In this document: piece after piece, positions 10,056-59,415 of the stretch | Numbering within the stretch: the first letter of the stretch is position 1 | Layout: every line of letters begins with the position of its first letter | Assembly: GCF_000143415.4 (NCBI RefSeq) | Contig: NW_003314263.1 | Location: 4,157,628-4,221,627 of the forward strand | Direction: 5' to 3' | Length of the DNA: 64,000 nucleotides | Origin: Selaginella moellendorffii | Taxonomy: Eukaryota > Plantae > Lycopodiophyta | Notes under the pieces: generated by a model | The model's database searches: none | The model's input: only the letters and a program-made list of their open reading frames with translations | What the model was told of the DNA's origin: nothing | Position numbers and translations under genes: made by a program

Positions 10056-10501
10056 CCAATCAGCTTAATGAGCTACATCTTGACTATATTTCATTCTTCC
10101 GCTGCTGTTGCTAGTGTTTAGCTATCGAGCACCAAAATAGCAACTTCAGGAAATGGGATCTGCTATAAACCCTAGCCAGGGGAGGAGATGTGGCGGTCAG
10201 GTAAGAAGCTTTACGGTTGAGAGGCATCCCAAAATGATCGCATTTTCTAGAACAGCTGCGGCTCGTCAGCTTTTCCAGAGGAGCTTGTGCAGTGGCCATG
10301 GATCATTAACAACTACTCAACCTGCACTGCGACTTGTCTTGCACTATGACAAGATCAACACATCCCTCATTCTTTTTGACAGTTCCTAGTACAGCATCGG
10401 CAGCCATGGTTGGTTGATGAAAGAATTTGGGGCCCTGCTTGCGTTAGGTACCAAATGCACCATTCACCAGCGCAAGCATTGCAATGGCTCCTACTGGAGC
10501 T
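10056..10501 (+). pseudogene. 5' fragment of the uncharacterised Cys/His-rich family gene (inverted copy of ~59095-59555)
   Basis: Near-identical to the reverse complement of 59095-59555. Carries a premature TAG at 10387-10389 and is truncated by a deletion. Confidence 0.85.
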
Positions 10502-13026
10502 GGAAACACAAAGGTATTGTAGAAAACAATGTTTGGCCAGCAAAGACAATTTCAGTGATTAACTTGGGAATCCAACTCTCAAATTGCGCTAAGGCTTCTT
10601 TACCTTTGACTTGGGCAATTTAAAGTAATTGAATAAGTTGTGTCTCACTATGTCCCCTCGTTTCCCCGCTAAATGATCTTCCATTTTAAAATATGCTGTG
10701 CACAATTGCATAAGAGCATTAAGAATTTTTTCCTGCAAAAAATTAAAAAATGAGATCATTTAAAACACTCTTATATCCACTTACCCCAAGAAATAAATAT
10801 GCAAGTTGGTGCAAAATCAACACTTTACCGTTTTCTGAAATTTCAACCGAAGACTTTTTGCATCCTCTCAAGTGCATGTTAATGGCAATAGGACTCCCCA
10901 ACGTCTCACCATCCGTGACGACTTGCCTCTTCTTCCGAGATGGCTCCTGATCACTTTCATTCTCATCACTGTCGTCGTCTATATCTCTATATGCTGGATC
11001 CTTGAGTTCGACATCAATATCTTCATCTTCATCCTCACCATCTTCACCACGCAGACTCTGCCGTTTGATTTGCGTGCAGCTACGCACAGGACGCTGGGGA
11101 GCTTCGTCCAGACCCACGTCCATGTGTTGGAGCAGTCCCTCGTCAGCCTCAGGGAGGGCCTGTGGAACTTGGCTGGGGCTGGCCTGGCTGGAGCTCGCTG
11201 CTCCTGGAACCGGAGCTTCGTCATCCCACCTGCAATGAACACAAAAAGACTGGTGATTAAAAGCAAGTGCGAAAGAGAGCATACTCCAATGCAGCTTTGG
11301 CAAGCTTCTGAGTGTTCACAGAGTAGGTGTCTCTGTTTCGAATCTGAACCGGCACGGCTTGCATTCTGTCATGGCGAAGCTCATACGTCCCATCCGGCCC
11401 TGGCATCAGCACTGGAAGCAGTGCATCGAAAGCTTCCTGGTTCCGTTGCGGTATGATCGCCACACTGCCCAGAAAGCATAAGAGCAAGTCCTCCTTCGTG
11501 ATCTGCTTTCTGTTGAGGAGAATGAAGCGGTTGAAGCAGGCGAGCCCTTTTACTTCCAGCGGTTTCCCACACAGCTTGGTCACAAAGTCCCGGAGCTTGA
11601 CAGGGTGAGTAAACTTATTGGCTTCGACGTCGTGCTTGCAACAGGCATGTACTGCCAGAAGCAGCACAATCCGCCCGACTATTTCCCCTCGAGGCCCCTC
11701 CACAACGTACGCTTGCTTGAAAACCCGCTGCGCCACCTCCAGCACCGCATTCAACTGATCTTTGTTGTCCAGTATGCGCGCGGCTGCCTCCCCCAATATA
11801 GGCTCGAACGCGTCCGCGGTGAAGACGCAGTCACGGTCGCCACTTACGTGGCTCACCGTCCGCATGTTGCCCGCCACCATGTCCTTGGCTAGTTCGGACC
11901 AGGCTACCACCTCGAGGCCAGCCGCCACCCCCAGAACGGCAATGCCCATTGCGTTTGTCAGCGATTCCTCACCGACCGGCTTCAGTCTCTCCATGGGCAT
12001 CCCCAGAAGCTTCTGCATGGCGAACGTCACAACCTCCATCCCATCTGCGCCATTGTCGAGAGTAGCACGCCACAGGGGCCGCCCCCACCTGAACAACTCC
12101 TTCGTCAGCTCTGCCAAGGGGGTGGTCGGATCCTTTGTCTTCAGCTGCAAGGACATTAGCTTCTTTGCCTGCTCGAAGTCCCACCACAAGCTCCCCACCA
12201 CCCAGATCGGCTCAAAGAACCTGGTCGAAGGAGCTCTTGCCCGGGAGCTGCGATCTTGCATTTGCGGAGGGATGACGAGGCCGAGCTTTCCGGCAGTATC
12301 TGCTACCAGTCCGAACACCTTTAAGTTGCGTGGAATGCACGAAAAAAACCTCCTGCAGGCCAGGAATGAACCGGCCACCTGTCCAAACCATGAAGACGCC
12401 TTGTCCATGCAGACAATGATCTTCTTATCGGGTACGAAAATCTTGTTGGCCGTCGTCCGGATCCAGTGAGTTAGCTTCACACCATCCCAGTCCTGTCCTG
12501 GACCGGGCTTGGACTCGCGCACCTCCTCCAGCACCTCCTCACTGAGTTTAAGGTAGCTGGAGGAACGAGCACAAAGTCAGCAAGCAAAAAGAGAAGATAG
12601 GAGAGAAGATAACCTTTTAGCCACGGCTTGGCCAAAATGTGGCTCCGACTGCTCCTTCATCCACTCCTCTGGAGATTTCTCTTTGATCTGAGTTAAAATG
12701 GCGAGAACCCATGCTGCCACGGCGCGTGGATCGTTGCTCATTTTGCTATAAATCAGCTGCTGCGCCACAGCACTTCGATCCGGGATGCCTGTAGACCCGG
12801 CCTTGAGAAAGGAGACGTACACAACGTAAAAGCCCTTGGTAGCCAGCTCTCGCATGGTCCTTGACTTTCCCCACCCAGAGCTCTGCAGCACCATCGTCCA
12901 TGCCGCAAGCCGCCCCATATCGTTGTGCCACTCGTCAAACAAGCCATTGATAACCTCTGCAACGTAGTCCAACACTTTGCAAGGATCCTGGTAAGGGCGA
13001 TTAATTGAGCAGCCAGTCACGTTCAT
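10502..13026 (-). pseudogene. 5'-truncated inverted duplicate of the Crinkler-like NTPase/nuclease gene
   Basis: ORFs 12577-13026, 11257-12534 and 10743-11303 are near-identical to 55151-57650. Walker B DEASS reads DKASS. The N-terminal ~200 codons are missing. Confidence 0.85.
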
Positions 13027-25825: not shown

Positions 25826-26529
25826 GCGTTGCTCATTTAGCATTTCAAAATGAATCATCCAAGAAAGAGATGAAGAGCGAGAAGTATCCTTAGAGACTTC
25901 TGGTGTGAGGAGCATTTGCGCTGGGATGGATGTGCCGCTGTGGACAAGTTCCAGGGTGTACATGCTAAAAGACCATGATTTTATCTCTTTGCTAGCGCTC
26001 ATACAATTACTTTGTGAAATGCTCAAGAAGATCATAAATGCCAAAGGAAACGAGAAGAACTATGGATGATGATCACGCTTGCGACACCTTTTTTAAATTA
26101 CGAGCATCCTCTTCAGGTTTTTGGATATTTTCACTAGAACACCATCCATCGAGCAAGACTACATTTGACAGGACATCACCCCGCTTGCGAGATGTTTGTT
26201 TTTTTTCTTCTTCCTTTTAAATATTTGTTTTCGTGCACTCCGCCTTGAAATGTCTTTGTTTTCTGTTCTGACATTGTTTTCGTCCTATAATCAGGTCTAT
26301 CAGTGTACACAATGGGAAACGATGGCCAGAAATGGACAGCTCCAAAGAAAAACCAAAAGCTCTACCAAGTTTCCAAAGTTCTGCATCAACATATCTAGTA
26401 AGAATGCAACGAGAGATTCTCAGCACATCCAATTACTTGTGCTCCCCCTGGAGCCTCCAAATAGAAAGAATGGCCAAACCAAAAGAGGATTCCACACCTA
26501 CCTAAAATCCGCAGCAAAAAATCATTACC

Positions 26530-43971: not shown

Positions 43972-46900
43972 TCATCGTTTGCTCCTTGCGGACTTGCTGT
44001 TAGCTCCACTCTTGTGAGCTTTGTTGTGCTGCTTCTTCCGCTTCTTCTGGATTCCCCCCAGTGCCTTGTTCACGCTCAGGCCCTCGAGCTTCTTGGTCAC
44101 CTTGAAAACGCTCTCCATTCCCTTGCGAGCCGCGGCCTTCTTCTCCCCGCGCCGGTTAAGCAATTTAGCGTCCAGGGGCCAGTACGCGTACGGCTCTAGC
44201 TTCCCGTCCCTCTTCACGTCCCCTCCAGCGCCTTTCTTGTTCACGTACTCGTCGCCCTTGTACGACCAGCCAGTGCTCCTCTTCTTTTGGTTCTCGGCGG
44301 CCACTTTGCCCCGTTTCTTAGCACCTTTTTTGCTCCTGCCAAACTCTTCTTCTTCTCCTTCCTCTTCCTCGTCTCTCGGCCGCTTGGAGGCGCGTCCTTG
44401 CTGCTGCTGCTGCTGCGGCTGCCTTTCTTCCACTATTAAACGGCCATCTGGATCAAAATCCATGTCTTCGTCGCTCTCTGCCTGGCTCTTCTTTGGCTTT
44501 CCTAGAGTTGACAGTGCCGCCCTCGTCTTTGAAACGTCAAGAAGATCCAGAGGCTCGTCCCTTCCTCGCTCGTCTTCCGGGAGCCTCCTCTTTTGCTTTG
44601 GCAGCTTCTTTGACCTGCTTTACCAGTAGTAACGCTTGCAAATGAGGGAATATGAGAGGTGAAGCTTACCTGGCAGTAGTAGCCTTGGACCTTGTGAAAG
44701 CCGTCGCACCTTCGCTCTCGTCGTCGCCATCGTTGTCCTCGTCCGAGTCAGAGAAGATGTCCGTGTGCTTCCACTTACTGCGCCTGCTAAAAACGAGTGT
44801 GACAAGTGAAAATGATATACCATCATTCTACTTACGTTGTGGTTGCACGAGTGAAGTGCGATCTCTTGTCATCCTCGCCATCAATAATTGATCTCTTTTT
44901 CTTCTCTTCGTGGTCCTTCCTCTGCAGATTCATCCGATTTAGCTAGACAAGAAACTGAATCAAGTACCTTTCGAATGTTGACGAGGTGCTTGGCATGCTC
45001 TTTGGGCATAACAGCAGAAACGGCCTCAAATCCACATTTTTTTAACAACTTCTCCAGTATCCCGCGGACCTGTTCCATTCGGTAAGCATAAAGAGCGTGC
45101 ACCAATAAAAGAACGACCTTTGCTTTAAATCTGTTCTTCGGATCTTCAGACCAAACCATCATAGCCTCCACCATTTCACTCAAACGGGGCATAAGCTCCT
45201 CTTTAGACATCATAGCAACGATTACTTTTAAAAGGCCAAGAACGGACTGCAAAATAGAAACCACCAGTTGTTCTTTTCAACAAAAGCAAAATTAAAACTA
45301 ACCTTGATTACTTCTCGACTCTTGTAGTTGCGAAGTAAATAAAATGCACTCGGAAGATATCGGTGTATCTCGCCTTTCAGCTCCGCTGGGAACTCGTACA
45401 CCATCCTTGAAATTGCACTGAGAGCCGCACTTATGACATGCGGCTCTCCAGCTGAGCCTGTTACTGCGGAACATCCCACCAACTGGGCCCAGAAACATCA
45501 AATATATGGAGTTAAAAACAAGCTGTCAATACCTTTCTAAAAAATTGGACAAGTTTCTCGTCAGAAACTTGCAACAGGCCATTCCCAATTCCAATTAAAA
45601 GCTCATAAGCTCCGTCTCTTGTTTTCTTGTTATTCTGTAAGAGAAAAGGCCAATTTGCTGCTTTAGATTGACGCTGATTAAATACCTCCTTCAGCGCAAG
45701 AACAGACTCTTTGAGAAGGAATGCTATGTAGTCGTTCGTATTCTCGTCCCCCTGCTGAAATGGCAAAAAAATTATCAACGACGAAAACTAATTGAAGATG
45801 CATCTACCTGCACGAGATGTAGAATCAACAACTGCAAGCAAGCAACCCTGTATTGTTTTGCAGAGGACTGGCATGCAGATGTAGCTTCCACGATAACTTC
45901 AAATATTTCTTGCTCTTTTGAAGAGAGAAAATCAGTATGTTCCTGTAAGTTCGAAACATAAATCTGAGCACTTGAAAACAAAATTTACCTTCAAAATACC
46001 AGCAAGAACTTTGTATCCTTTTTTCTGAACACCAGAGTCTGGATCCTAAAGGGAGATAATTAGATAATGAAGAAATAAAGGTTTTGCGTGCCCAAAACTC
46101 CCACCTGCAATGCAGGCTTTGCAACTGCGAAAAGCGCGCTCAAGCCTTTATGATCCAAACCACCAACTAGTGACAAAGCAAGATCCATAAACATGCACCT
46201 GTCCAAAATTTTAGACCATAGATGATTTCAGTAGTTATGTAACGAATTACCTTCTCTCTTTCGCATTTGTATCTTTGGTGGCTTCCAAAAGCTTCTCCAT
46301 GACCGTTCGGAAAAACTTCTGAACAGTAGCTTTGCTTGATATAGACGCAAAAGCACCAATAGCAGCCTAGCAATTCACTTGTTAAAAAAAAAAAGAGAAA
46401 ATAGATAATGCATCCTAGTACCTGTAACTCTCCCCGTTTTTCTGGTGGTGACTCGCAAAATATATTGAAAAGAAGTGGAAGAAACTTATCCGAAAACGCA
46501 GAAATGGCTGACAAGTTTGCCGAGGCAATGTCCTTGGAATAACATGCTTTTTCCTTTGCATCCAAATCCACGTCCATGCCGTCATTAGCGTCGCAGATAG
46601 ATTTGTTTTGCTTTATCAATGTCTGAGGATAAAAACGACGTCAAGCGTAGTGCACAGGAAGTAAGAAGCTTCACCTGGATGCTGGAAGAGATTACTCCTC
46701 TAAGGTCCGGATACTTTCTCATTGACTCCCCAAGAAGCTTTGCAATCACCTGGAAGCTGTCTTTGGTGTCCACAGGATAATTGCAAAAGGATGGAAGAAG
46801 AGCCCAAAGAGCTTGTGCGCATGCTTCTGCATTTTTTGCGGGCGCCCCAGAAAGCTGCAAAGAACGCTGTTTAGTACGATTCTAAAAGAAAACATATATA

Positions 46901-48643
46901 TATCAACCTCATGTGCTTTTACTGCAAGATTTTCTGCCAAAGGACCGATGGTAGTCGCGAAGTATTTGAGCCTTGCTCCAACAAGATGTTGCTTCAAGAT
47001 AGGTATCAACCAGATGCGGGCTTTGTCTAGCTGCGTGGCATCCATGTCCAATGGCAAGAGCTCCAAAAAACGTTCTGGTCCCATAGCCACAACGGCTGCT
47101 CCAAAACTATTGTGTAGCTGTAAAAGAGTATCAAACGTGAAATCTAGCGTGTAAAACTTGCCTGCTTTCGACAAGGCAAGTCCTCGTCTCTAAGTTTTTG
47201 TAGTTCGGCGAGAACTTTAACAATTCCTTTCATGAATCGAAAGGAGGCCTCACCTGGAAAAAGAAGGAATAAAATGGAATGAGCTACAGCTTTAAAAAGC
47301 GAGAGAAAGTTACCCATTTTCTGGAAAAGTGCCGAGACAACGAGCAAAGCTTTATCCCAGGCGCCGGAATATTCATAGCTCAATGACCTTTCAACGGACG
47401 AACAGATACTTTCAATAGCAACTGGATCGGTTTCTAGCTGTCTCAGCATTGCGCCATCTATGAAGCGATCTGCTAAGCCTCGGAGACACTCCGCTGCACC
47501 AAACACAACCTCTTCCTGTTCCGAAGCAAAGAGATCTGGAATACAGTAAAGGAAACTTTCGGCTCCAAGAGAAAAAAGAAAGAAAAGGAACTATACCTGT
47601 GATGGCATCGAATGGCGCCGGAAGCTGGCCGGCGCAGAGTTTAGGATCGATGGCGTACAAGTTAGACAGCCCCTGCTCTATCACATGAACTGCCGTCATG
47701 ACCTCGTCCACATCCCTGTTATCAGCCGTGACGAGGGAGAGAACAGCACGAATAACGCCCACCAATGCCGCCGATGAAACGCCCGTCCTGGATCTTCTTC
47801 CCAGAGAAAGAAGAACATTGAGTACGTTCCTGGTGACGAGTGACTGCTTCAAAGTGATGAGAAGTGTGACGCTGGGAAGCACTCTCGCGATGGTCTTGGG
47901 CGACATGGCTGGCAGAAGAAGCCGCATGGCCCCGATCATGTGTAAGAGCTTCAGAGCACCAGCGGCAGCGTCCTCGTTGCTCTTGCCTTTGGCCAGGAAA
48001 GGTGACGCGCATTCTTCGAACGACGAGGCAACTAAGTCGCTAGCTTTGTCGAGAGCCGCCGAGCCATGGAAGCTAGACAAGACTTGCGCAGCGCACAAGT
48101 AAGCGCGCCTTCGCACCTAGAGAAGCCTGCGATCAAGCTCCGGAGAAAGAAAAGAAAACGAAGCGAGCGTACCTTTGGTCTCATATCCACGCAAAACTTG
48201 AGAAGCAACTGGAACGATCCAGCCAGAGCCGGCCAGCTCGATCGATCGGCGGCGCAAAGGATGCACTCGATGCACGACAGCGCGGGCTTGGCAGTGGCAG
48301 CCGGAAGTTTTGCGTCCCCCAGCACCTTGTCCAAAACAACCAGAGCCTTTCCACTCGTGGATCGCAGCACGGAGGCGGGAAGCTTGGGAAGGAGCGTGGC
48401 CAGGAATGTGAGGAAAGCCGTGGTATCGGCTCCATCCACGGCGCCTGCATTGCATTGCTGCTCCAGCGGCGCCATGGTCGCGGCGAAATACGCCGTGGGA
48501 ATCAGCGGCAGGCCCTGCTCTTTCAGCACCTCCATCACCGCGCTTACCACCGCCAGTAGCTGCTTGTGCTCGGGCGCCGGAGAATTGTGGAAGCGATTGA
48601 GCAGCGCGCGCCCCACATCCTCCTCCTCCTCCTCCATCGCCAT
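43972..48643 (-). CDS. RRP12: RRP12-like ribosome biogenesis protein (NUC173 domain), multi-exon
   Basis: [50 protein letters not shown], and C-terminal GDVKRDGKLEPYAYWPLD. About 17 short introns. Confidence 0.93.
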
Positions 48644-48723: not shown

Positions 48724-50094
48724 ATGTGGTCAGGTAAAGGTTGATGTTTTACGGAAATGATCTTACATTCTTCTACTTCACCAGCGGCAAGGGGCCAGTT
48801 AAGGCGCCATCGCTCATCTTCATGGCAGCCAGGTAAGTATTTTAAAGGTTGAGAGAGGTGATGATAGATTTCTCTTGTGGAGCAGTGGTGGCTTGCCGAT
48901 TTTTCTTGAGGAGCTTCTGTATGGGCCTTCGATCATCATCCACACCGCGGCCAGGTAAGAAAGTTGATGGAAATGATTTCAGGTTTTCTTTTTCCTTTGG
49001 AACAGTTGGTCATGGATCATCATCATGCGATACTCGGCCGGCACCGCAACTTGTTTTGCGGTACAACAGAGCCAACACTTCACTCCTTCTCTTTGGTGAC
49101 TGTTGGTACAATGGCGGTGGCCATGGTTGGTCGATGAGAGAATTCGGGGCCTTGCTTGAATCTGGACACTCCCAGACGGAGTGTACTAATCGGAATCGCA
49201 AGCACTGCGATGGTACTTACTGGAGCTGCCCCTATAGCAGGCGCGACATAGATTATGATCCAGACATGGCTCCCTCCGTAAGAGAGCTCGAGCAATGCCA
49301 GATTAGAAGCATTGAGACTACCGGCGTCCTCTCGACTTTGGAGCTCGGGCTTAGATACAACAAGTGGGATGGCGGGGCATGCATTTGGGACACAAGCGTG
49401 GAAACAGATCGTGCGAGAATAATCGAGGAACACTTGGAGATTAAGTACGAGAGAGCTGCAACAGGATGCGTGCTTGTATCCGTTCCTACGTTAGCTCTCA
49501 AGTACAAGGCGCTTAAGTGGATACTCAAGACCGACGTCACTAGCTTCCCCCTCGAATTACTTCCTGACGAGTTTATATCAAATTCGAGCACGAAGGTTCA
49601 GGAGAAGGCGATGCTCGAGCTGGCGGAGGCCGTTTTACAGGGGATAAAGAGGTATGTTATTGAAGGGATTGGCATTATGAGGAAAGCTGGTTTGTTTTTT
49701 TCCAGGTGTGTTATTGTGGATCTCCGAGGGATTGGAACAATGAGAAAAGTTGGTTTGTTTTTTCCTGGTGCGACGGTGGATAAGATGCTCGAGTATATCG
49801 GCAAAGAGCCTGTCCCAGTTGGGGAATTCCTCAAAGAAGACGACTGGAAGGAGCTCGGTGTTGAGAATGTTGGCAGAGAGGAAGTAGTCTGCTTCACCAT
49901 CGATTTGGAGTGGACTGTGGAGCTGTTACTGGAATTCAAAGTTGACAAATCAATCGTAAGTACCCTCTAGAATCGTTGTATCTAAACTTCTTGCGTTTGG
50001 GCAGGGGGTAGGAACAGGCCTCTTCCCTCCCCGTTCGGAGCCATCAACTGAGCAACCGAGTTCGCCATGGCAATTACTTCTGGAAACCATCTAG
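48724..50094 (+). CDS. Uncharacterised Cys/His-rich protein, possibly organelle-targeted (paralog of 58200-59415)
   Basis: ATG TGG TCA G|gt start, three short 5' introns and long ORF 48849-49970. Aligns to the paralog (GHGWxMxEFGALL, KHCxxxYWSCPYS, DYDPDM, LKYKAL, FPLE). A last intron at ~49956 is inferred. Confidence 0.7.
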
Positions 50095-51324
50095 TGACAG
50101 AGGTAAAAATGTGATAATGGGCTCGTTGTTGGAGGACGTACATAACACATCACCATAGAGTTCTATGTATCATTCTTCATTCTTAGTGACACAGTTTGAC
50201 GCATTATGGAAAACGATTTTGCTGTAATTTAGATGCGGACTTCCCGAATGAGGATTTCTCCACGCCGCCAAAGAGAACGTACAAGGCCCCTGGCAGCTGT
50301 GTTCTTCCGGATGGCTCTTGCAAGTGGAACTCGATCTACGAGCATCTGGCTTAAAACCAAAACTAATCTATTGTCTATTCAAACCTTTATGGAGGTAAAA
50401 CTCTTCAATATATGCTCCTAGCAAACCAAATTGGACAAAAAACTGGCTGAGTGCCAATGTGTGCTAGCACTCGTGATCCTTAGTCACCTCGTACTTCTAT
50501 TCAAAGAAGAAACACGAGTCGTCGATCAAGCTCCACTTCCTGGAGCCCGGTCTTGTAAGTCGGCTCATCTCGTACACTTGTTCGTGCCGTCTGAAAGCTT
50601 AAACTCGGGCATCGGTCCCTTGTGGATCCTGTTTCGAGCAGCAGCTCCTCCTCCTCTGGATGAAGCTCCTGGTTGCTGGAGATTGCGACGACGGGGGAGG
50701 AGAAGAGGAAGACGCGTAAGGATTTGCTGGCGATGGCGATGGCGATGGGGATGGAGAAGGATTTGGTGGCGTTTGAGAGCTTGATGGTGCAGCTGATGGA
50801 GCGCCAAAGCCACAAGAACTCGCTCTCCTCCTTAAATACTGAGATCATCTGTGGTTTAATATTTTCATAAAGGTGGGAGCGGGAGCACTGCTGCAACTAG
50901 CCCGCAGGCGGCAGCCCCTGGAGCGGCTCCAAGTTTTGACTCAGGTATAAAGTCTTGGAGTATGGTTTGGTTTCTAATGTTGTTGACGCTGGTAATCGCA
51001 GCAGAGAGTTCTGGATCTAATGCGGGACCGTCAGTTTCCGCAAGTGGCTCTGGTGTTGAAACGGCAGCTTCAGTAGGATCTAGTAGTTCGTCAGCTGGCG
51101 AGCCGATGCTGGTAGTATCATCGTCAACTTCGCCAGCTTTAACCGGATCATCACTATCAACACCAGCTTCTGGAGAATCCACACTAGCGTCGTTGTTGGC
51201 TGGATCGTTTACTCCAATGCCATCGTCCGCTTCGACTGGATCAAGCACGCCAGGCCAAACTTCGAGCTCGTCCGCTCAGACTGGATCAAGCTCAGCACTA
51301 CCTGGCACTGGAACTGGATATGGC

Positions 51325-51975
51325 GATTACCTTGTCTCTTTCGCATATGTATGTTTCGTGGCTTTCAAAAGTTTCTCCATGACCGTTCGGAATTGTTACT
51401 ACTAGAAAGACAAAGAAGATGCATCCTAGTACCTGTAACTCTCCCCGTTTTTCTGGTGGTGAATCACAAAAAATATTGAAAAGAAGAGGAAGAAACTTAT
51501 CCGAAAACGCAGAAATGGCTGACAAGTTTGCCCGATGCAATGTCCTTGGAATAACATGCTTTTTCCTTTTGTTTTGCTTTTCCAATATCTAAGGATAAAA
51601 ACTCGTCAAGCGTAGTTCACAGGAAGTAAGAAGCTTCACCTGGATGCTGGAAGAGATCACTCCTCTAAGATCTTCCTCAAGAAGCTTTGCAATCACCTTG
51701 TCCACAGGATAATTGCAAAAGGATGGAAGAAGAGCCCAAAGATCAAGCTCCGGAGAAAGAAAAGAAAACGAGGCGAGCGTACCTTTGGTCTCATATCCAC
51801 GCAAAACTTGAGAAGCAGCTCGATCGATCGGCGGCGCAAAGGATACACTCGATGCGTGGCAGAAAACAACAACCAGAGCCTTTTCACTCGTGGATCGCAG
51901 CACGGAGGCGGGAAGCTTGGGAAGGAACGCGGCCAGGAATGTGAGGAAAGCCGTCTGAAATTTAGGGTTTATACA
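51325..51975 (-). pseudogene. Multiply deleted partial copy of RRP12 5' half
   Basis: Patchwork of blocks matching 46246-46810, 48131-48421 and 48664-48690, including intron sequence. Confidence 0.9.
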
Positions 51976-58199: not shown

Positions 58200-59415
58200 A
58201 ACTCTTGCAGGGGATTTAGAATGCATCACGCGGCACCTCAGAAGAAACGCATTCATCCAAATACCTATATGATGATGGTTCAGGAAGCCTACGAAGAGAG
58301 GCAGCAATACTTACGGCTGATTTTTCGAAGTCGTTCGCGAACAGTAGCACTATTTCCATGGTCCAGACCAAGTCGTTTATGAAGCATGCCACTGTGTTTA
58401 TGTTGATGTCACCAACCCCAAGCGCCTCCCAGTCATCTTTGTTAGAGACGTTAGAGACGGTGATCGCTGTGATTACTAAGGAGCAAGCCCCGGGCCTGGC
58501 TGGGGAATTCCTCGCAGCTTATCCACAGTAGCACCAGGTAGAAACAACCCCACCTTTTTCATGATCCCAATGCCCCGGAGATCCACTACAACACATCTCC
58601 TGATCCCCTGCAGCACCGCCTCACCCAACTCAAGTATGGCATCTTTTTCCTTCAGCCTCGTATTGGAGCTGGCCGCATTCGTCACAAACTCGTGTGGCAA
58701 AATCTCCAGCGGGAAGTTGTTGCAAAAATCGCGCTCAAGGTTCCATTGCAATGCCTTGTACTTGAGTGCCTTTGAAGGAACCGAGAGTAGCACACAATTT
58801 GTAGGGACCCTGTTATGCCAGATGTCCAAACATTCCTCAGATAATCTTGCGCAATTTATCTCCTTGTTACGCCACGCGTGCATAAACTCCTTATATTCCT
58901 TGGATAATTTTGCACGATCTATCTCTCGATCTTCATCGCTGATCACCACCGAGTCCGTCTTGTATCTGATACCAAGCTCGAAAGTAGAAAGGCAGCCGGT
59001 GGCCTCGATGCTCTCAATCTGGCAAGGCATGAGCTCAGTCACGGACGGTGGCATGTCCGGGTCGTAGTCTAAGTCAGGGCGGCTATACGGGCAGCTCCAG
59101 TAGGAGCTATTGCAATGCTTGCGCTGGTGAATGGTGCATTTGGTACCTCGGTGAGCCAACGCAAGCAGGGCCCCAAATTCTTTCATCAACCAACCATGGC
59201 TGCCGATGCTGTAATAGGAACTGTCAAAAAGAATGAGGGATGTGTTGATCTTGTCATAGTGCAAGACAAGTCGCGGTGCAGGTTGAGTAGTTGTTAATGA
59301 TCCATGGCCACTGCACAAGCTCCTCTGGAAAAGCTGACGAGCCGCAGCTGTTCTAGAAAATGCGATCATTTTGGATAGCCTCTCAACCGTAAAGCTTCTT
59401 ACCTGACCGCCACAT
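58200..59415 (-). pseudogene. Uncharacterised Cys/His-rich family gene disrupted by a micro-inversion
   Basis: ATG TGG CGG TCA G|gt at 59415 and ORF 58476-59369. The homologous tail KDDWEALGV...CFINDLVWTME continues out of frame beyond inverted 58441-58513. Confidence 0.7.

What the first reader, a model, noticed from the sequence alone, without database searches (positions are those of the whole stretch)
49650..49765. Apparent recent intron birth by tandem duplication of an AGGT-bounded exon segment
Seen: the unit AGGT(A/G)TGTTATTG...GGGATTGG...ATGAG.AAAG.TGGTTTGTTTTTTCC occurs twice in tandem. The first copy reads AG|GTATGT...TTTGTTTTTTTCCAG|GT, a 54-nt GT-AG segment (49652-49705) with a strong donor and polypyrimidine tract. 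Removing it restores KRCVIVDLRGIG, matching the unduplicated paralog (RRCVVVDLRGIG). The first copy has lost 9 nt while the second keeps the conserved DLR. Established: duplication of AGGT-containing exon sequence is a classic proposed intron-gain mechanism with few clear natural examples. Inference: this is one.
Basis: partly seen in the sequence, partly recalled or inferred. Interest (0 to 1): 0.75.

Follow-up and report, generated by a model that had tools for sequence, protein, structure and literature searches.

The report
Intron candidate made by exon duplication
In a Selaginella-only gene of unknown function, a 54-base decayed tandem copy of the next exon's start looks like a short intron and is already annotated as one; this is a tidy example of a known way introns arise, but no transcript evidence was available to show it is spliced.

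Summary
Window 49650-49703 is a decayed tandem copy of 49704-49765: 46 of 52 aligned bases are identical, with a 9-nt deletion and one extra T, and the match lies about 15 SD above shuffles.

The window is Selaginella moellendorffii. The gene is SELMODRAFT_404745, and its GenBank model already treats 49652-49705 (54 nt, AG|GTATGT...TTTGTTTTTTTCCAG|GT) as an intron.

**For an intron made by duplication:**
- Removing the 54 nt makes the protein colinear with all of its relatives, every one from this species. None carries the extra 18 residues.
- The paralog at 58.5 kb has continuous DNA at this site.
- The upstream copy has lost four family-invariant residues (C, D, L, R). It scores 27 bits worse against a family profile than the downstream copy.
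- Its length, AT content and splice signals match neighbouring 51-57-nt introns.

This fits Rogers' AGGT tandem-duplication model.

**Caveats:**
- The segment is in frame and stop-free.
- No transcript data could be reached.
- No RefSeq protein for this locus was retrieved.
- The other haplotype's DNA could not be fetched.
- "Recent" is doubtful. The copies differ by 11.5%, against 5% amino-acid difference between the two allelic gene models.
- The mechanism is well documented; a 2012 review counts 188 events.

Verdict: probably a real intron born by duplication (about 0.55), a new member of a known kind, of moderate-to-low interest.

The parts
48921..48954 (+). Exon 1 of SELMODRAFT_404745 as in the JGI model. 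The allele model P0001 starts at the upstream ATG at 48861.
   Evidence: Exact mapping of P0009 to the window; alignment with P0001.
48955..49005 (+). Intron 1: 51 nt, GTAAGA...ACAG, in frame and stop-free. The paralog has a 55-nt intron at the corresponding place (59402-59348).
   Evidence: no similarity to the flanking exons.
49006..49651 (+). Exon 2, ending ...GGG ATA AAG AG|
49650..49703 (+). Copy 1 of the duplicated unit, decayed. Derived changes: Cys to Tyr, a 9-nt deletion that removes D-L-R, Val to Ala, and one extra T.
49652..49705 (+). Candidate intron: 54 nt, phase 2, AG|GTATGT...TTTGTTTTTTTCCAG|GT, 37% GC and 41% T. Annotated as an intron in EFJ36192.1.
49704..49765 (+). Copy 2 of the unit, conserved. 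It encodes R-CVIVDLRGIGTMRKVGLFFP, the most conserved motif of the family.
49706..49955 (+). Exon 3.
49956..50011 (+). Intron 3: 56 nt, GTAAGT...GGTAG.
   Evidence: the same junction is implied by P0001.
50012..50102 (+). Exon 4, following the structure of the allele model P0001. The JGI model P0009 instead runs on to 50137 and is probably mis-fused downstream.
   Evidence: Reading against P0001.
50233..50354 (+). Last exon in the P0001-like structure, with the TAA stop at 50352-50354. The reading frame is intact across all five exons.
   Evidence: tblastn of P0001 residues 364-405 onto 50232-50351 at 95%; ORF list.
58530..58600 (-). Single-copy, intron-free equivalent of the unit in the paralog (LOC112341366 / SELMODRAFT_404747). 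Here the Arg codon is AGA, so there is no AGGT.

Best explanation
A 62-nt (or possibly 63-nt) stretch of exon was duplicated in tandem. It ran from the Arg-Cys codons AGG TGT to the Gly-Leu-Phe-Phe-Pro codons GGT TTG TTT TTT CC. The gene is a Selaginella moellendorffii-specific gene of unknown function, SELMODRAFT_404745. The unit begins with AG|GT and ends in a T-rich run. The duplication therefore placed a 5' splice site (AG|GTGTGT, now GTATGT) one unit upstream of a ready-made pyrimidine tract and 3' site (TTTGTTTTTTCC-AG|GT). Splicing from the first GT to the second AG removes exactly one unit and restores the original mRNA. [quoted passage not shown] Once freed from coding constraint, the upstream copy lost 9 nt, gained a T and collected substitutions, while the downstream copy kept the conserved motif. 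Shown here: the duplication, the splice signals, colinearity with relatives after removal, and decay of one copy only. Inferred: that the spliceosome actually removes the segment, wholly or in part. Because the segment is now in frame and stop-free, retaining it would only add 18 residues, so splicing need not be complete.
For: - **Duplication:** it is real and unique to this site.
- **Organism and gene:** identified. The GenBank model EFJ36192.1 maps exactly to the window with 49652-49705 as an intron.
- **Relatives:** there are 12 further clusters at 50% identity among 1.84 billion proteins, all from S. moellendorffii, plus close copies. Where the motif region is present it occurs once; none has the extra 18 residues.
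- **Paralog:** its DNA is continuous at this site.
- **Profile scores:** against a family profile built without the sister allele, the spliced form scores 325.8 bits as one colinear domain. A form keeping only copy 1 scores 298.8 bits. The unspliced form is split into two domains.
- **Decay of copy 1:** it lost the invariant C, D, L and R.
- **Polarity:** with the paralog as outgroup, most changes are derived in copy 1, including G to A at donor position +3.
- **Composition and length:** the segment is 54 nt, 37% GC and 41% T, against 47-51% GC in the flanking exons. Neighbouring introns are 51, 55, 56 and 57 nt.
- **Rarity of the signals:** a strict, post hoc signal pattern occurs twice in the window on both strands, against 0.15 expected.
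- **Period:** a 62-nt period would shift the frame if retained, yet the downstream exons are intact.
Against:
- No RefSeq (XP) protein was retrieved for this locus or its allele, although several paralogs have one. The gene may be poorly expressed or silent.
- The segment is in frame with no stop, so it could be translated.
- There is no clear CTRAY branch point (read).
- The JGI model may be homology-driven, so it is not independent evidence.
- The exonic copy 2 is equally T-rich (39% T), so composition alone does not separate intron from exon here.
Confidence: 0.55

Rival explanations
1. The 54 nt are a retained in-frame coding duplication. They are translated as an 18-residue insertion (YVIEGIGIMRKAGLFFSR) ahead of the conserved motif, and the annotated intron is an artefact of homology-guided gene prediction.
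For: The segment is in frame and has no stop. Internal exon duplications are common and mostly stay exonic (Gao & Lynch 2009, as cited in PMC4974935). The +1 T restores a multiple of 3, as selection on a translated insert would favour. The allele P0001 carries another small in-frame tandem duplication (DKMLDKML) three codons downstream, so in-frame slippage products are tolerated in this region.
Against: Copy 1 lost four residues that are invariant across the nine aligned family members, and costs 27 bits against the family profile. The splice signals are near consensus and the length is typical for local introns. A low-confidence model (mean pLDDT 35.6; 50-78 in this region) places the unit as a beta-hairpin, so a partial extra hairpin would sit next to the conserved one. 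This last point is weak evidence.
Confidence: 0.18
2. The gene is silent or decaying. It would be one of many degenerate copies of a lineage-specific family, so the question of splicing has no functional meaning.
For: The family is confined to S. moellendorffii, and many of its models are truncated or fragmentary. No RefSeq protein was retrieved for this locus or its allele. The surrounding region is full of rearranged segmental copies. The neighbouring paralog appears broken after the motif.
Against: The reading frame is intact across five exons up to the same stop as in the allele model. The allele models are 95% identical with no disabling change. Motif residues are invariant among paralogs only about 35% identical, which indicates past purifying selection.
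Confidence: 0.22
3. The acceptor AG was not present when the duplication arose. Slippage between the two GGTG repeats 62 nt apart gave a ...CCT|GGTG junction, and a later T-to-A change created the AG. This would be stepwise intronization of a duplicated segment rather than one-step intron birth.
For: GGTG occurs at the start of the unit (49705-08) and immediately after it (49767-70), 62 nt apart. This is the usual signature of microhomology-mediated tandem duplication.
Against: It needs one more substitution than the AGGT-bounded reading. A 62-nt insert that is not spliced would shift the frame. The two readings cannot be separated from this sequence alone.
Confidence: 0.05

Closest known systems
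Vertebrate ATP2A1 intron created by a segmental duplication (Hellsten et al. 2011, PMC3265369)
   Same: A tandem duplication of an AGGT-containing exon segment supplied the donor, acceptor and pyrimidine tract. Splicing restores the unduplicated coding sequence.
   Different: That case is about 500 million years old, is shared by jawed vertebrates, and was re-enacted experimentally in the paralog ATP2A2. The present case is young enough for both copies to align at 88%, sits in an orphan gene, and has no splicing evidence.
Fission-yeast SPOG_01682 and SOCG_00815 (Zhu & Niu 2013, as summarised in PMC4974935)
   Same: Tandem copies of a short AGGT-containing exon segment, with an intron spanning whole repeat units.
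   Different: Those units are 24 bp, in several copies, and are backed by ESTs. Here there is one extra copy of about 62 nt and no transcript data.
Potato RdRp intron gain by tandem duplication (Ma, Lan & Niu 2016, PMC4974935)
   Same: A plant example of an intron born from a tandem duplication, with the source sequence still recognisable.
   Different: In potato the duplication spanned an existing intron-exon boundary and inherited that intron's 3' signals. Here the unit is purely exonic and all signals come from codons.
Genome-wide internal gene duplications that create introns (Gao & Lynch 2009; 188 tandem-duplication events tabulated in PMC3443670)
   Same: The same class of event, described as prevalent in Arabidopsis, rice, nematodes, flies, mammals and Cryptococcus.
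   Different: Many catalogued events are imprecise and use latent sites. This one would be precise. I found no lycophyte example in the papers searched.

Membership tests
[quoted passage not shown] | A head-to-tail duplication of a segment that was exonic. | tested here: met
   The copies align at 46 of 52 bases, z about 15-16. The unit is coding in all relatives.
[quoted passage not shown] | Each copy carries AGGT, so that the GT of copy 1 and the AG of copy 2 bound one unit. | tested here: met
   AG|GT at 49650-53 and 49704-07. The intron in model P0009 uses exactly these sites.
[quoted passage not shown] | Removing the segment restores the ancestral coding sequence. | tested here: met
   The spliced form is colinear with the family profile at 325.8 bits as one domain. 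The unspliced form splits into two domains. See also the alignments.
[quoted passage not shown] | Relatives lack an intron at this position, so it is a gain and not a loss elsewhere. | tested here: inconclusive
   The in-window paralog has continuous DNA at this site. For the other members only proteins were available. DNA of the other haplotype could not be fetched.
[quoted passage not shown] | The segment is removed from transcripts. | not testable with these tools
   No RNA data were available. The fragment search and the metagenome scan were both blank.
U2-type GT-AG spliceosomal intron of this genome | Consensus donor, pyrimidine tract and acceptor, with length and AT content in the local range. 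| tested here: met
   AG|GTATGT and TTTGTTTTTTTCCAG|GT; 54 nt against local introns of 51-57 nt; 63% AT against 49-53% in the flanking exons.
U2-type GT-AG spliceosomal intron of this genome | A recognisable branch point (CTRAY-like) 18-40 nt upstream of the AG. | tested here: inconclusive
   No clear match by eye. To my knowledge plant branch sites are loosely defined.
Translated in-frame internal duplication | Open frame through the insert. | tested here: met
   54 nt with no stop.
Translated in-frame internal duplication | Both copies kept under protein-level constraint. | tested here: not met
   Copy 1 lost the invariant C, D, L and R, and scores 27 bits lower than copy 2.

The most novel reading that the evidence does not exclude
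This is an intron caught at an intermediate stage. The duplicated segment is spliced in only part of the transcripts. Its present in-frame, stop-free state (-9 nt, +1 T) was favoured because it makes retention harmless. If so, this locus, possibly polymorphic between the two haplotypes, would show how a duplication-born intron passes from optional to constitutive.
Probability: 0.2. Interest if true: 0.55.

Novelty: new member of a known kind. Interest (0 to 1): 0.35.

Why it matters
For most recently gained introns the source sequence cannot be identified (PMC4974935). Cases where both the parent exon and the derived intron are still readable are therefore useful for teaching and for splicing experiments. 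This one is compact at 54 nt, and all of its splice signals trace back to ordinary codons (Arg-Cys and Gly-Leu-Phe-Phe-Pro). It comes from a lycophyte, a lineage for which I found no such example in the papers searched. It adds no new mechanism, and it sits in an orphan gene of unknown function and uncertain expression.

Tried and rejected
- **Tandem Repeats Finder:** gave no row for the pair. A direct alignment was used instead.
- **Protein function:** Pfam found nothing. A PDB profile search gave only E of about 0.4-0.6 to CKS1. ESM Atlas hits were at chance level, 0.83. The protein stays unassigned.
- **Structure:** AlphaFold2 on the 9-sequence family alignment gave mean pLDDT 35.6, too poor for a fold search. 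A second model with the 18 residues included was judged uninformative and was not run.
- **Short ORF fragments:** a 132-residue query across the site, meant to catch transcript-derived ORFs, returned nothing.
- **Metagenome scan:** an exact scan for the spliced or unduplicated junction returned nothing.
- **Earlier scan notes:** no relatives and no similar finding.
- **Literature:** no paper names these genes. Banks et al. 2011 was not held.
- **Introner or transposon origin:** rejected. The 54 nt have no other copy in the window apart from the adjacent exon and the paralog's exon.
- **Spliced sequences:** The spliced form was represented by database proteins P0009 and P0001. Joined strings were built from the window file only inside a local script, for profile scoring.

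Full report
**What is in the sequence**

The stretch 49650-49765 reads AGGTATGTTATTGAAGGGATTGG...TTTGTTTTTTTCC, followed directly by AGGTGTGTTATTGTGGATCTCCGAGGGATTGG...TTTGTTTTTTCC.
- Aligned globally, copy 1 (49650-49703, 54 nt) and copy 2 (49704-49765, 62 nt) share 46 of 52 aligned bases. Copy 1 lacks 9 nt and has one extra T in the T-run.
- The local alignment score is 55. Shuffles of copy 2 give 14.3 +/- 2.7, with a maximum of 34 in 2000.
- The 54-nt segment scored against the 150 nt downstream gives z = 16. Five other introns of this gene and its paralog give z of 2.4 or less against their flanks.
- Tandem Repeats Finder missed the pair, which is unsurprising for two diverged copies with an indel.
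- GT at 49652 and AG at 49704-05 bound 54 nt. The segment is in frame (phase 2) and has no stop codon.

**Organism and gene**

- The open frame has no Pfam domain.
- A word-based protein search found only Selaginella moellendorffii proteins.
- The in-window paralog on the minus strand (58479-59415) matches RefSeq XP_024517084 (LOC112341366) at 99.7-100%, so the window is S. moellendorffii.
- The cluster of the best hit holds two GenBank proteins. EFJ18618.1 (SELMODRAFT_419806, P0001) lies on a 1.63-Mb scaffold. EFJ36192.1 (SELMODRAFT_404745, P0009) lies on the same 4.46-Mb scaffold as the paralog.
- P0009 maps exactly onto the window. Its exons are 48921-48954, 49006-49651, 49706-49955 and 50012 onward. 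The published JGI model therefore already treats 49652-49705 as an intron.
- P0001 is 95% identical to P0009 over 338 aligned residues. It most likely represents the second haplotype. The assembly is known to hold two haplotypes (PMC3095285; PMC3442193).
- With the P0001-like 3' end (exon 50012-50102, last exon 50233-50354), the window gene has an intact frame across five exons.
- The 3' half of P0009 (exons 5-7) looks like a mis-fusion into neighbouring repeats.

**The family**

- A profile of nine members, searched against 1.84 billion representative proteins, found 13 clusters. All are from S. moellendorffii.
- PDB and ESM Atlas gave nothing above chance.
- An AlphaFold2 model was poor, with mean pLDDT 35.6. 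Function is therefore unknown.
- The duplicated unit encodes the most conserved part of the family. C, V, D, L, R, G, I, G, K, G, L and F are invariant across the nine aligned members.
- In every member that retains this region the motif occurs once; none carries an extra 18 residues.
- The paralog's DNA is continuous through it.

**Which copy decayed**

With the paralog as outgroup, most changes are derived in copy 1:
- G to A, making GTGTGT into GTATGT (Cys to Tyr if translated);
- the 9-nt deletion that removes D-L-R;
- AGA to AGG and GTT to GCT;
- the extra T.

Copy 2 shows essentially one amino-acid change (Ile to Thr). I scored three forms against a family profile built without the sister allele:

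| Form | Result |
|---|---|
| Spliced | 325.8 bits, one colinear domain |
| Only copy 1 kept | 298.8 bits |
| Unspliced | Split into two domains that repeat profile positions 223-243 |

The joined strings for this scoring were built from the window file inside the script. No joined sequence went to a search tool.

**Does it look like an intron of this genome?**

- The donor is AG|GTATGT and the acceptor is TTTGTTTTTTTCCAG|GT.
- It is 54 nt long, 37% GC and 41% T. The flanking exons are 47-51% GC.
- Neighbouring annotated introns are 51, 55, 56 and 57 nt. Selaginella introns are reported to be short (PMC3442193, citing Banks et al. 2011).
- A strict signal pattern, chosen after seeing the candidate, matches only this site and one other on both strands of the window. 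The chance expectation is 0.15.
- There is no clear branch-point motif.
- The exonic copy 2 is just as T-rich (39%). The intron-like composition was therefore already present in the Gly-Leu-Phe-Phe-Pro codons.

**Mechanism**

The unit starts with the Arg-Cys codons AGG TGT and ends in GGT TTG TTT TTT CC. A tandem duplication places GT one unit upstream of a pyrimidine tract plus AG. Splicing between them removes one unit exactly, which is Rogers' model.

The period measured from copy 2 is 62 nt. If retained, the fresh duplication would have shifted the frame, which mildly favours splicing from the outset. A 63-nt in-frame unit with two later substitutions at the junction cannot be excluded.

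GGTG lies at the start of the unit and just after it, 62 nt apart. Slippage at this microhomology is therefore possible. In that reading the acceptor AG needed one later T-to-A change.

**Age**

The copies differ at 6 of 52 aligned sites (11.5%) plus two indels. The focal gene and the paralog differ at 29% of aligned bases. The two allelic protein models differ at 5% of residues.

I estimate, as an inference, that allelic nucleotide divergence is about 3%. A duplication younger than the allele split would then give at most about 1.6 differences in 52 nt. Six is unlikely under that assumption. The event is therefore younger than the paralog split but probably older than the haplotype split. "Recent" holds only loosely.

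**What is missing**

There is no evidence of splicing or even of transcription.
- No RefSeq protein for this locus or its allele appeared in searches covering 73-610 residues, although several paralogs have XP entries.
- A metagenome scan for the spliced junction was blank.

**Comparison with what is known**

- Intron gain by tandem duplication was shown in vivo for ATP2A1/ATP2A2 (PMC3265369).
- It has EST-backed cases in fission yeast and a potato case (PMC4974935).
- A 2012 review tabulates 188 events in seven genera and calls the mechanism prevalent (PMC3443670).
- No paper found names these Selaginella genes.

The finding is therefore a neat new member of a known kind, not a new mechanism.

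**Weights**

| Reading | Weight |
|---|---|
| Spliced intron born by duplication | about 0.55 |
| Silent or decaying gene | about 0.22 |
| Translated 18-residue insertion | about 0.18 |
| Stepwise creation of the acceptor | about 0.05 |

Noticed in passing
window 10057-13001 versus 59554-59092 and 57656-55151: An inverted, chimeric segmental copy at 94-95% identity. It includes a 92-residue fragment 93% identical to the paralog's N-terminus at 10234-10509.
   Followed up: partly
window 51350-51954 versus 46270-48421: Seven pieces of the region holding the minus-strand RRP12-like ORFs (my reading of the ORF translations, not tested) recur almost contiguously at 91-100% identity. A 44-nt stretch (46558-46601) and 1.3 kb (46811-48130) are absent from the copy. 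It looks like a patchwork, processed or captured gene fragment. The JGI model SELMODRAFT_404745 runs into it, so its 3' exons are probably a mis-fusion.
   Followed up: partly
protein P0001 (SELMODRAFT_419806), aligned to window about 49778-49789: The allele model reads DKMLDKMLEYIG where the window reads DKMLEYIG. This implies a separate four-codon (12-nt) tandem duplication three codons after the unit, which suggests the region is prone to slippage.
   Followed up: no
window 58437-58534 (-): The two annotations of the paralog disagree. RefSeq reads through to a stop at 58479. The JGI model splices 98 nt from a donor (CCTG|GTGCTA) that sits at the exact equivalent of the right edge of the duplicated unit, and rejoins the conserved DDWEALGV exon. 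Without that splice the paralog is truncated.
   Followed up: partly
window 26455-26501 (-): This is the only other site in the window that matches the strict short-intron signal pattern (AG|GTAGGT, 47 nt, pyrimidine-rich 3' end, AG|G). I did not check whether it lies in a gene.
   Followed up: no
window 48955-49005: Intron 1 of the focal gene (51 nt) is also in frame and stop-free, so a purely ORF-based reading adds 17 spurious residues. Unlike the 54-nt segment, it shows no similarity to its flanks.
   Followed up: yes
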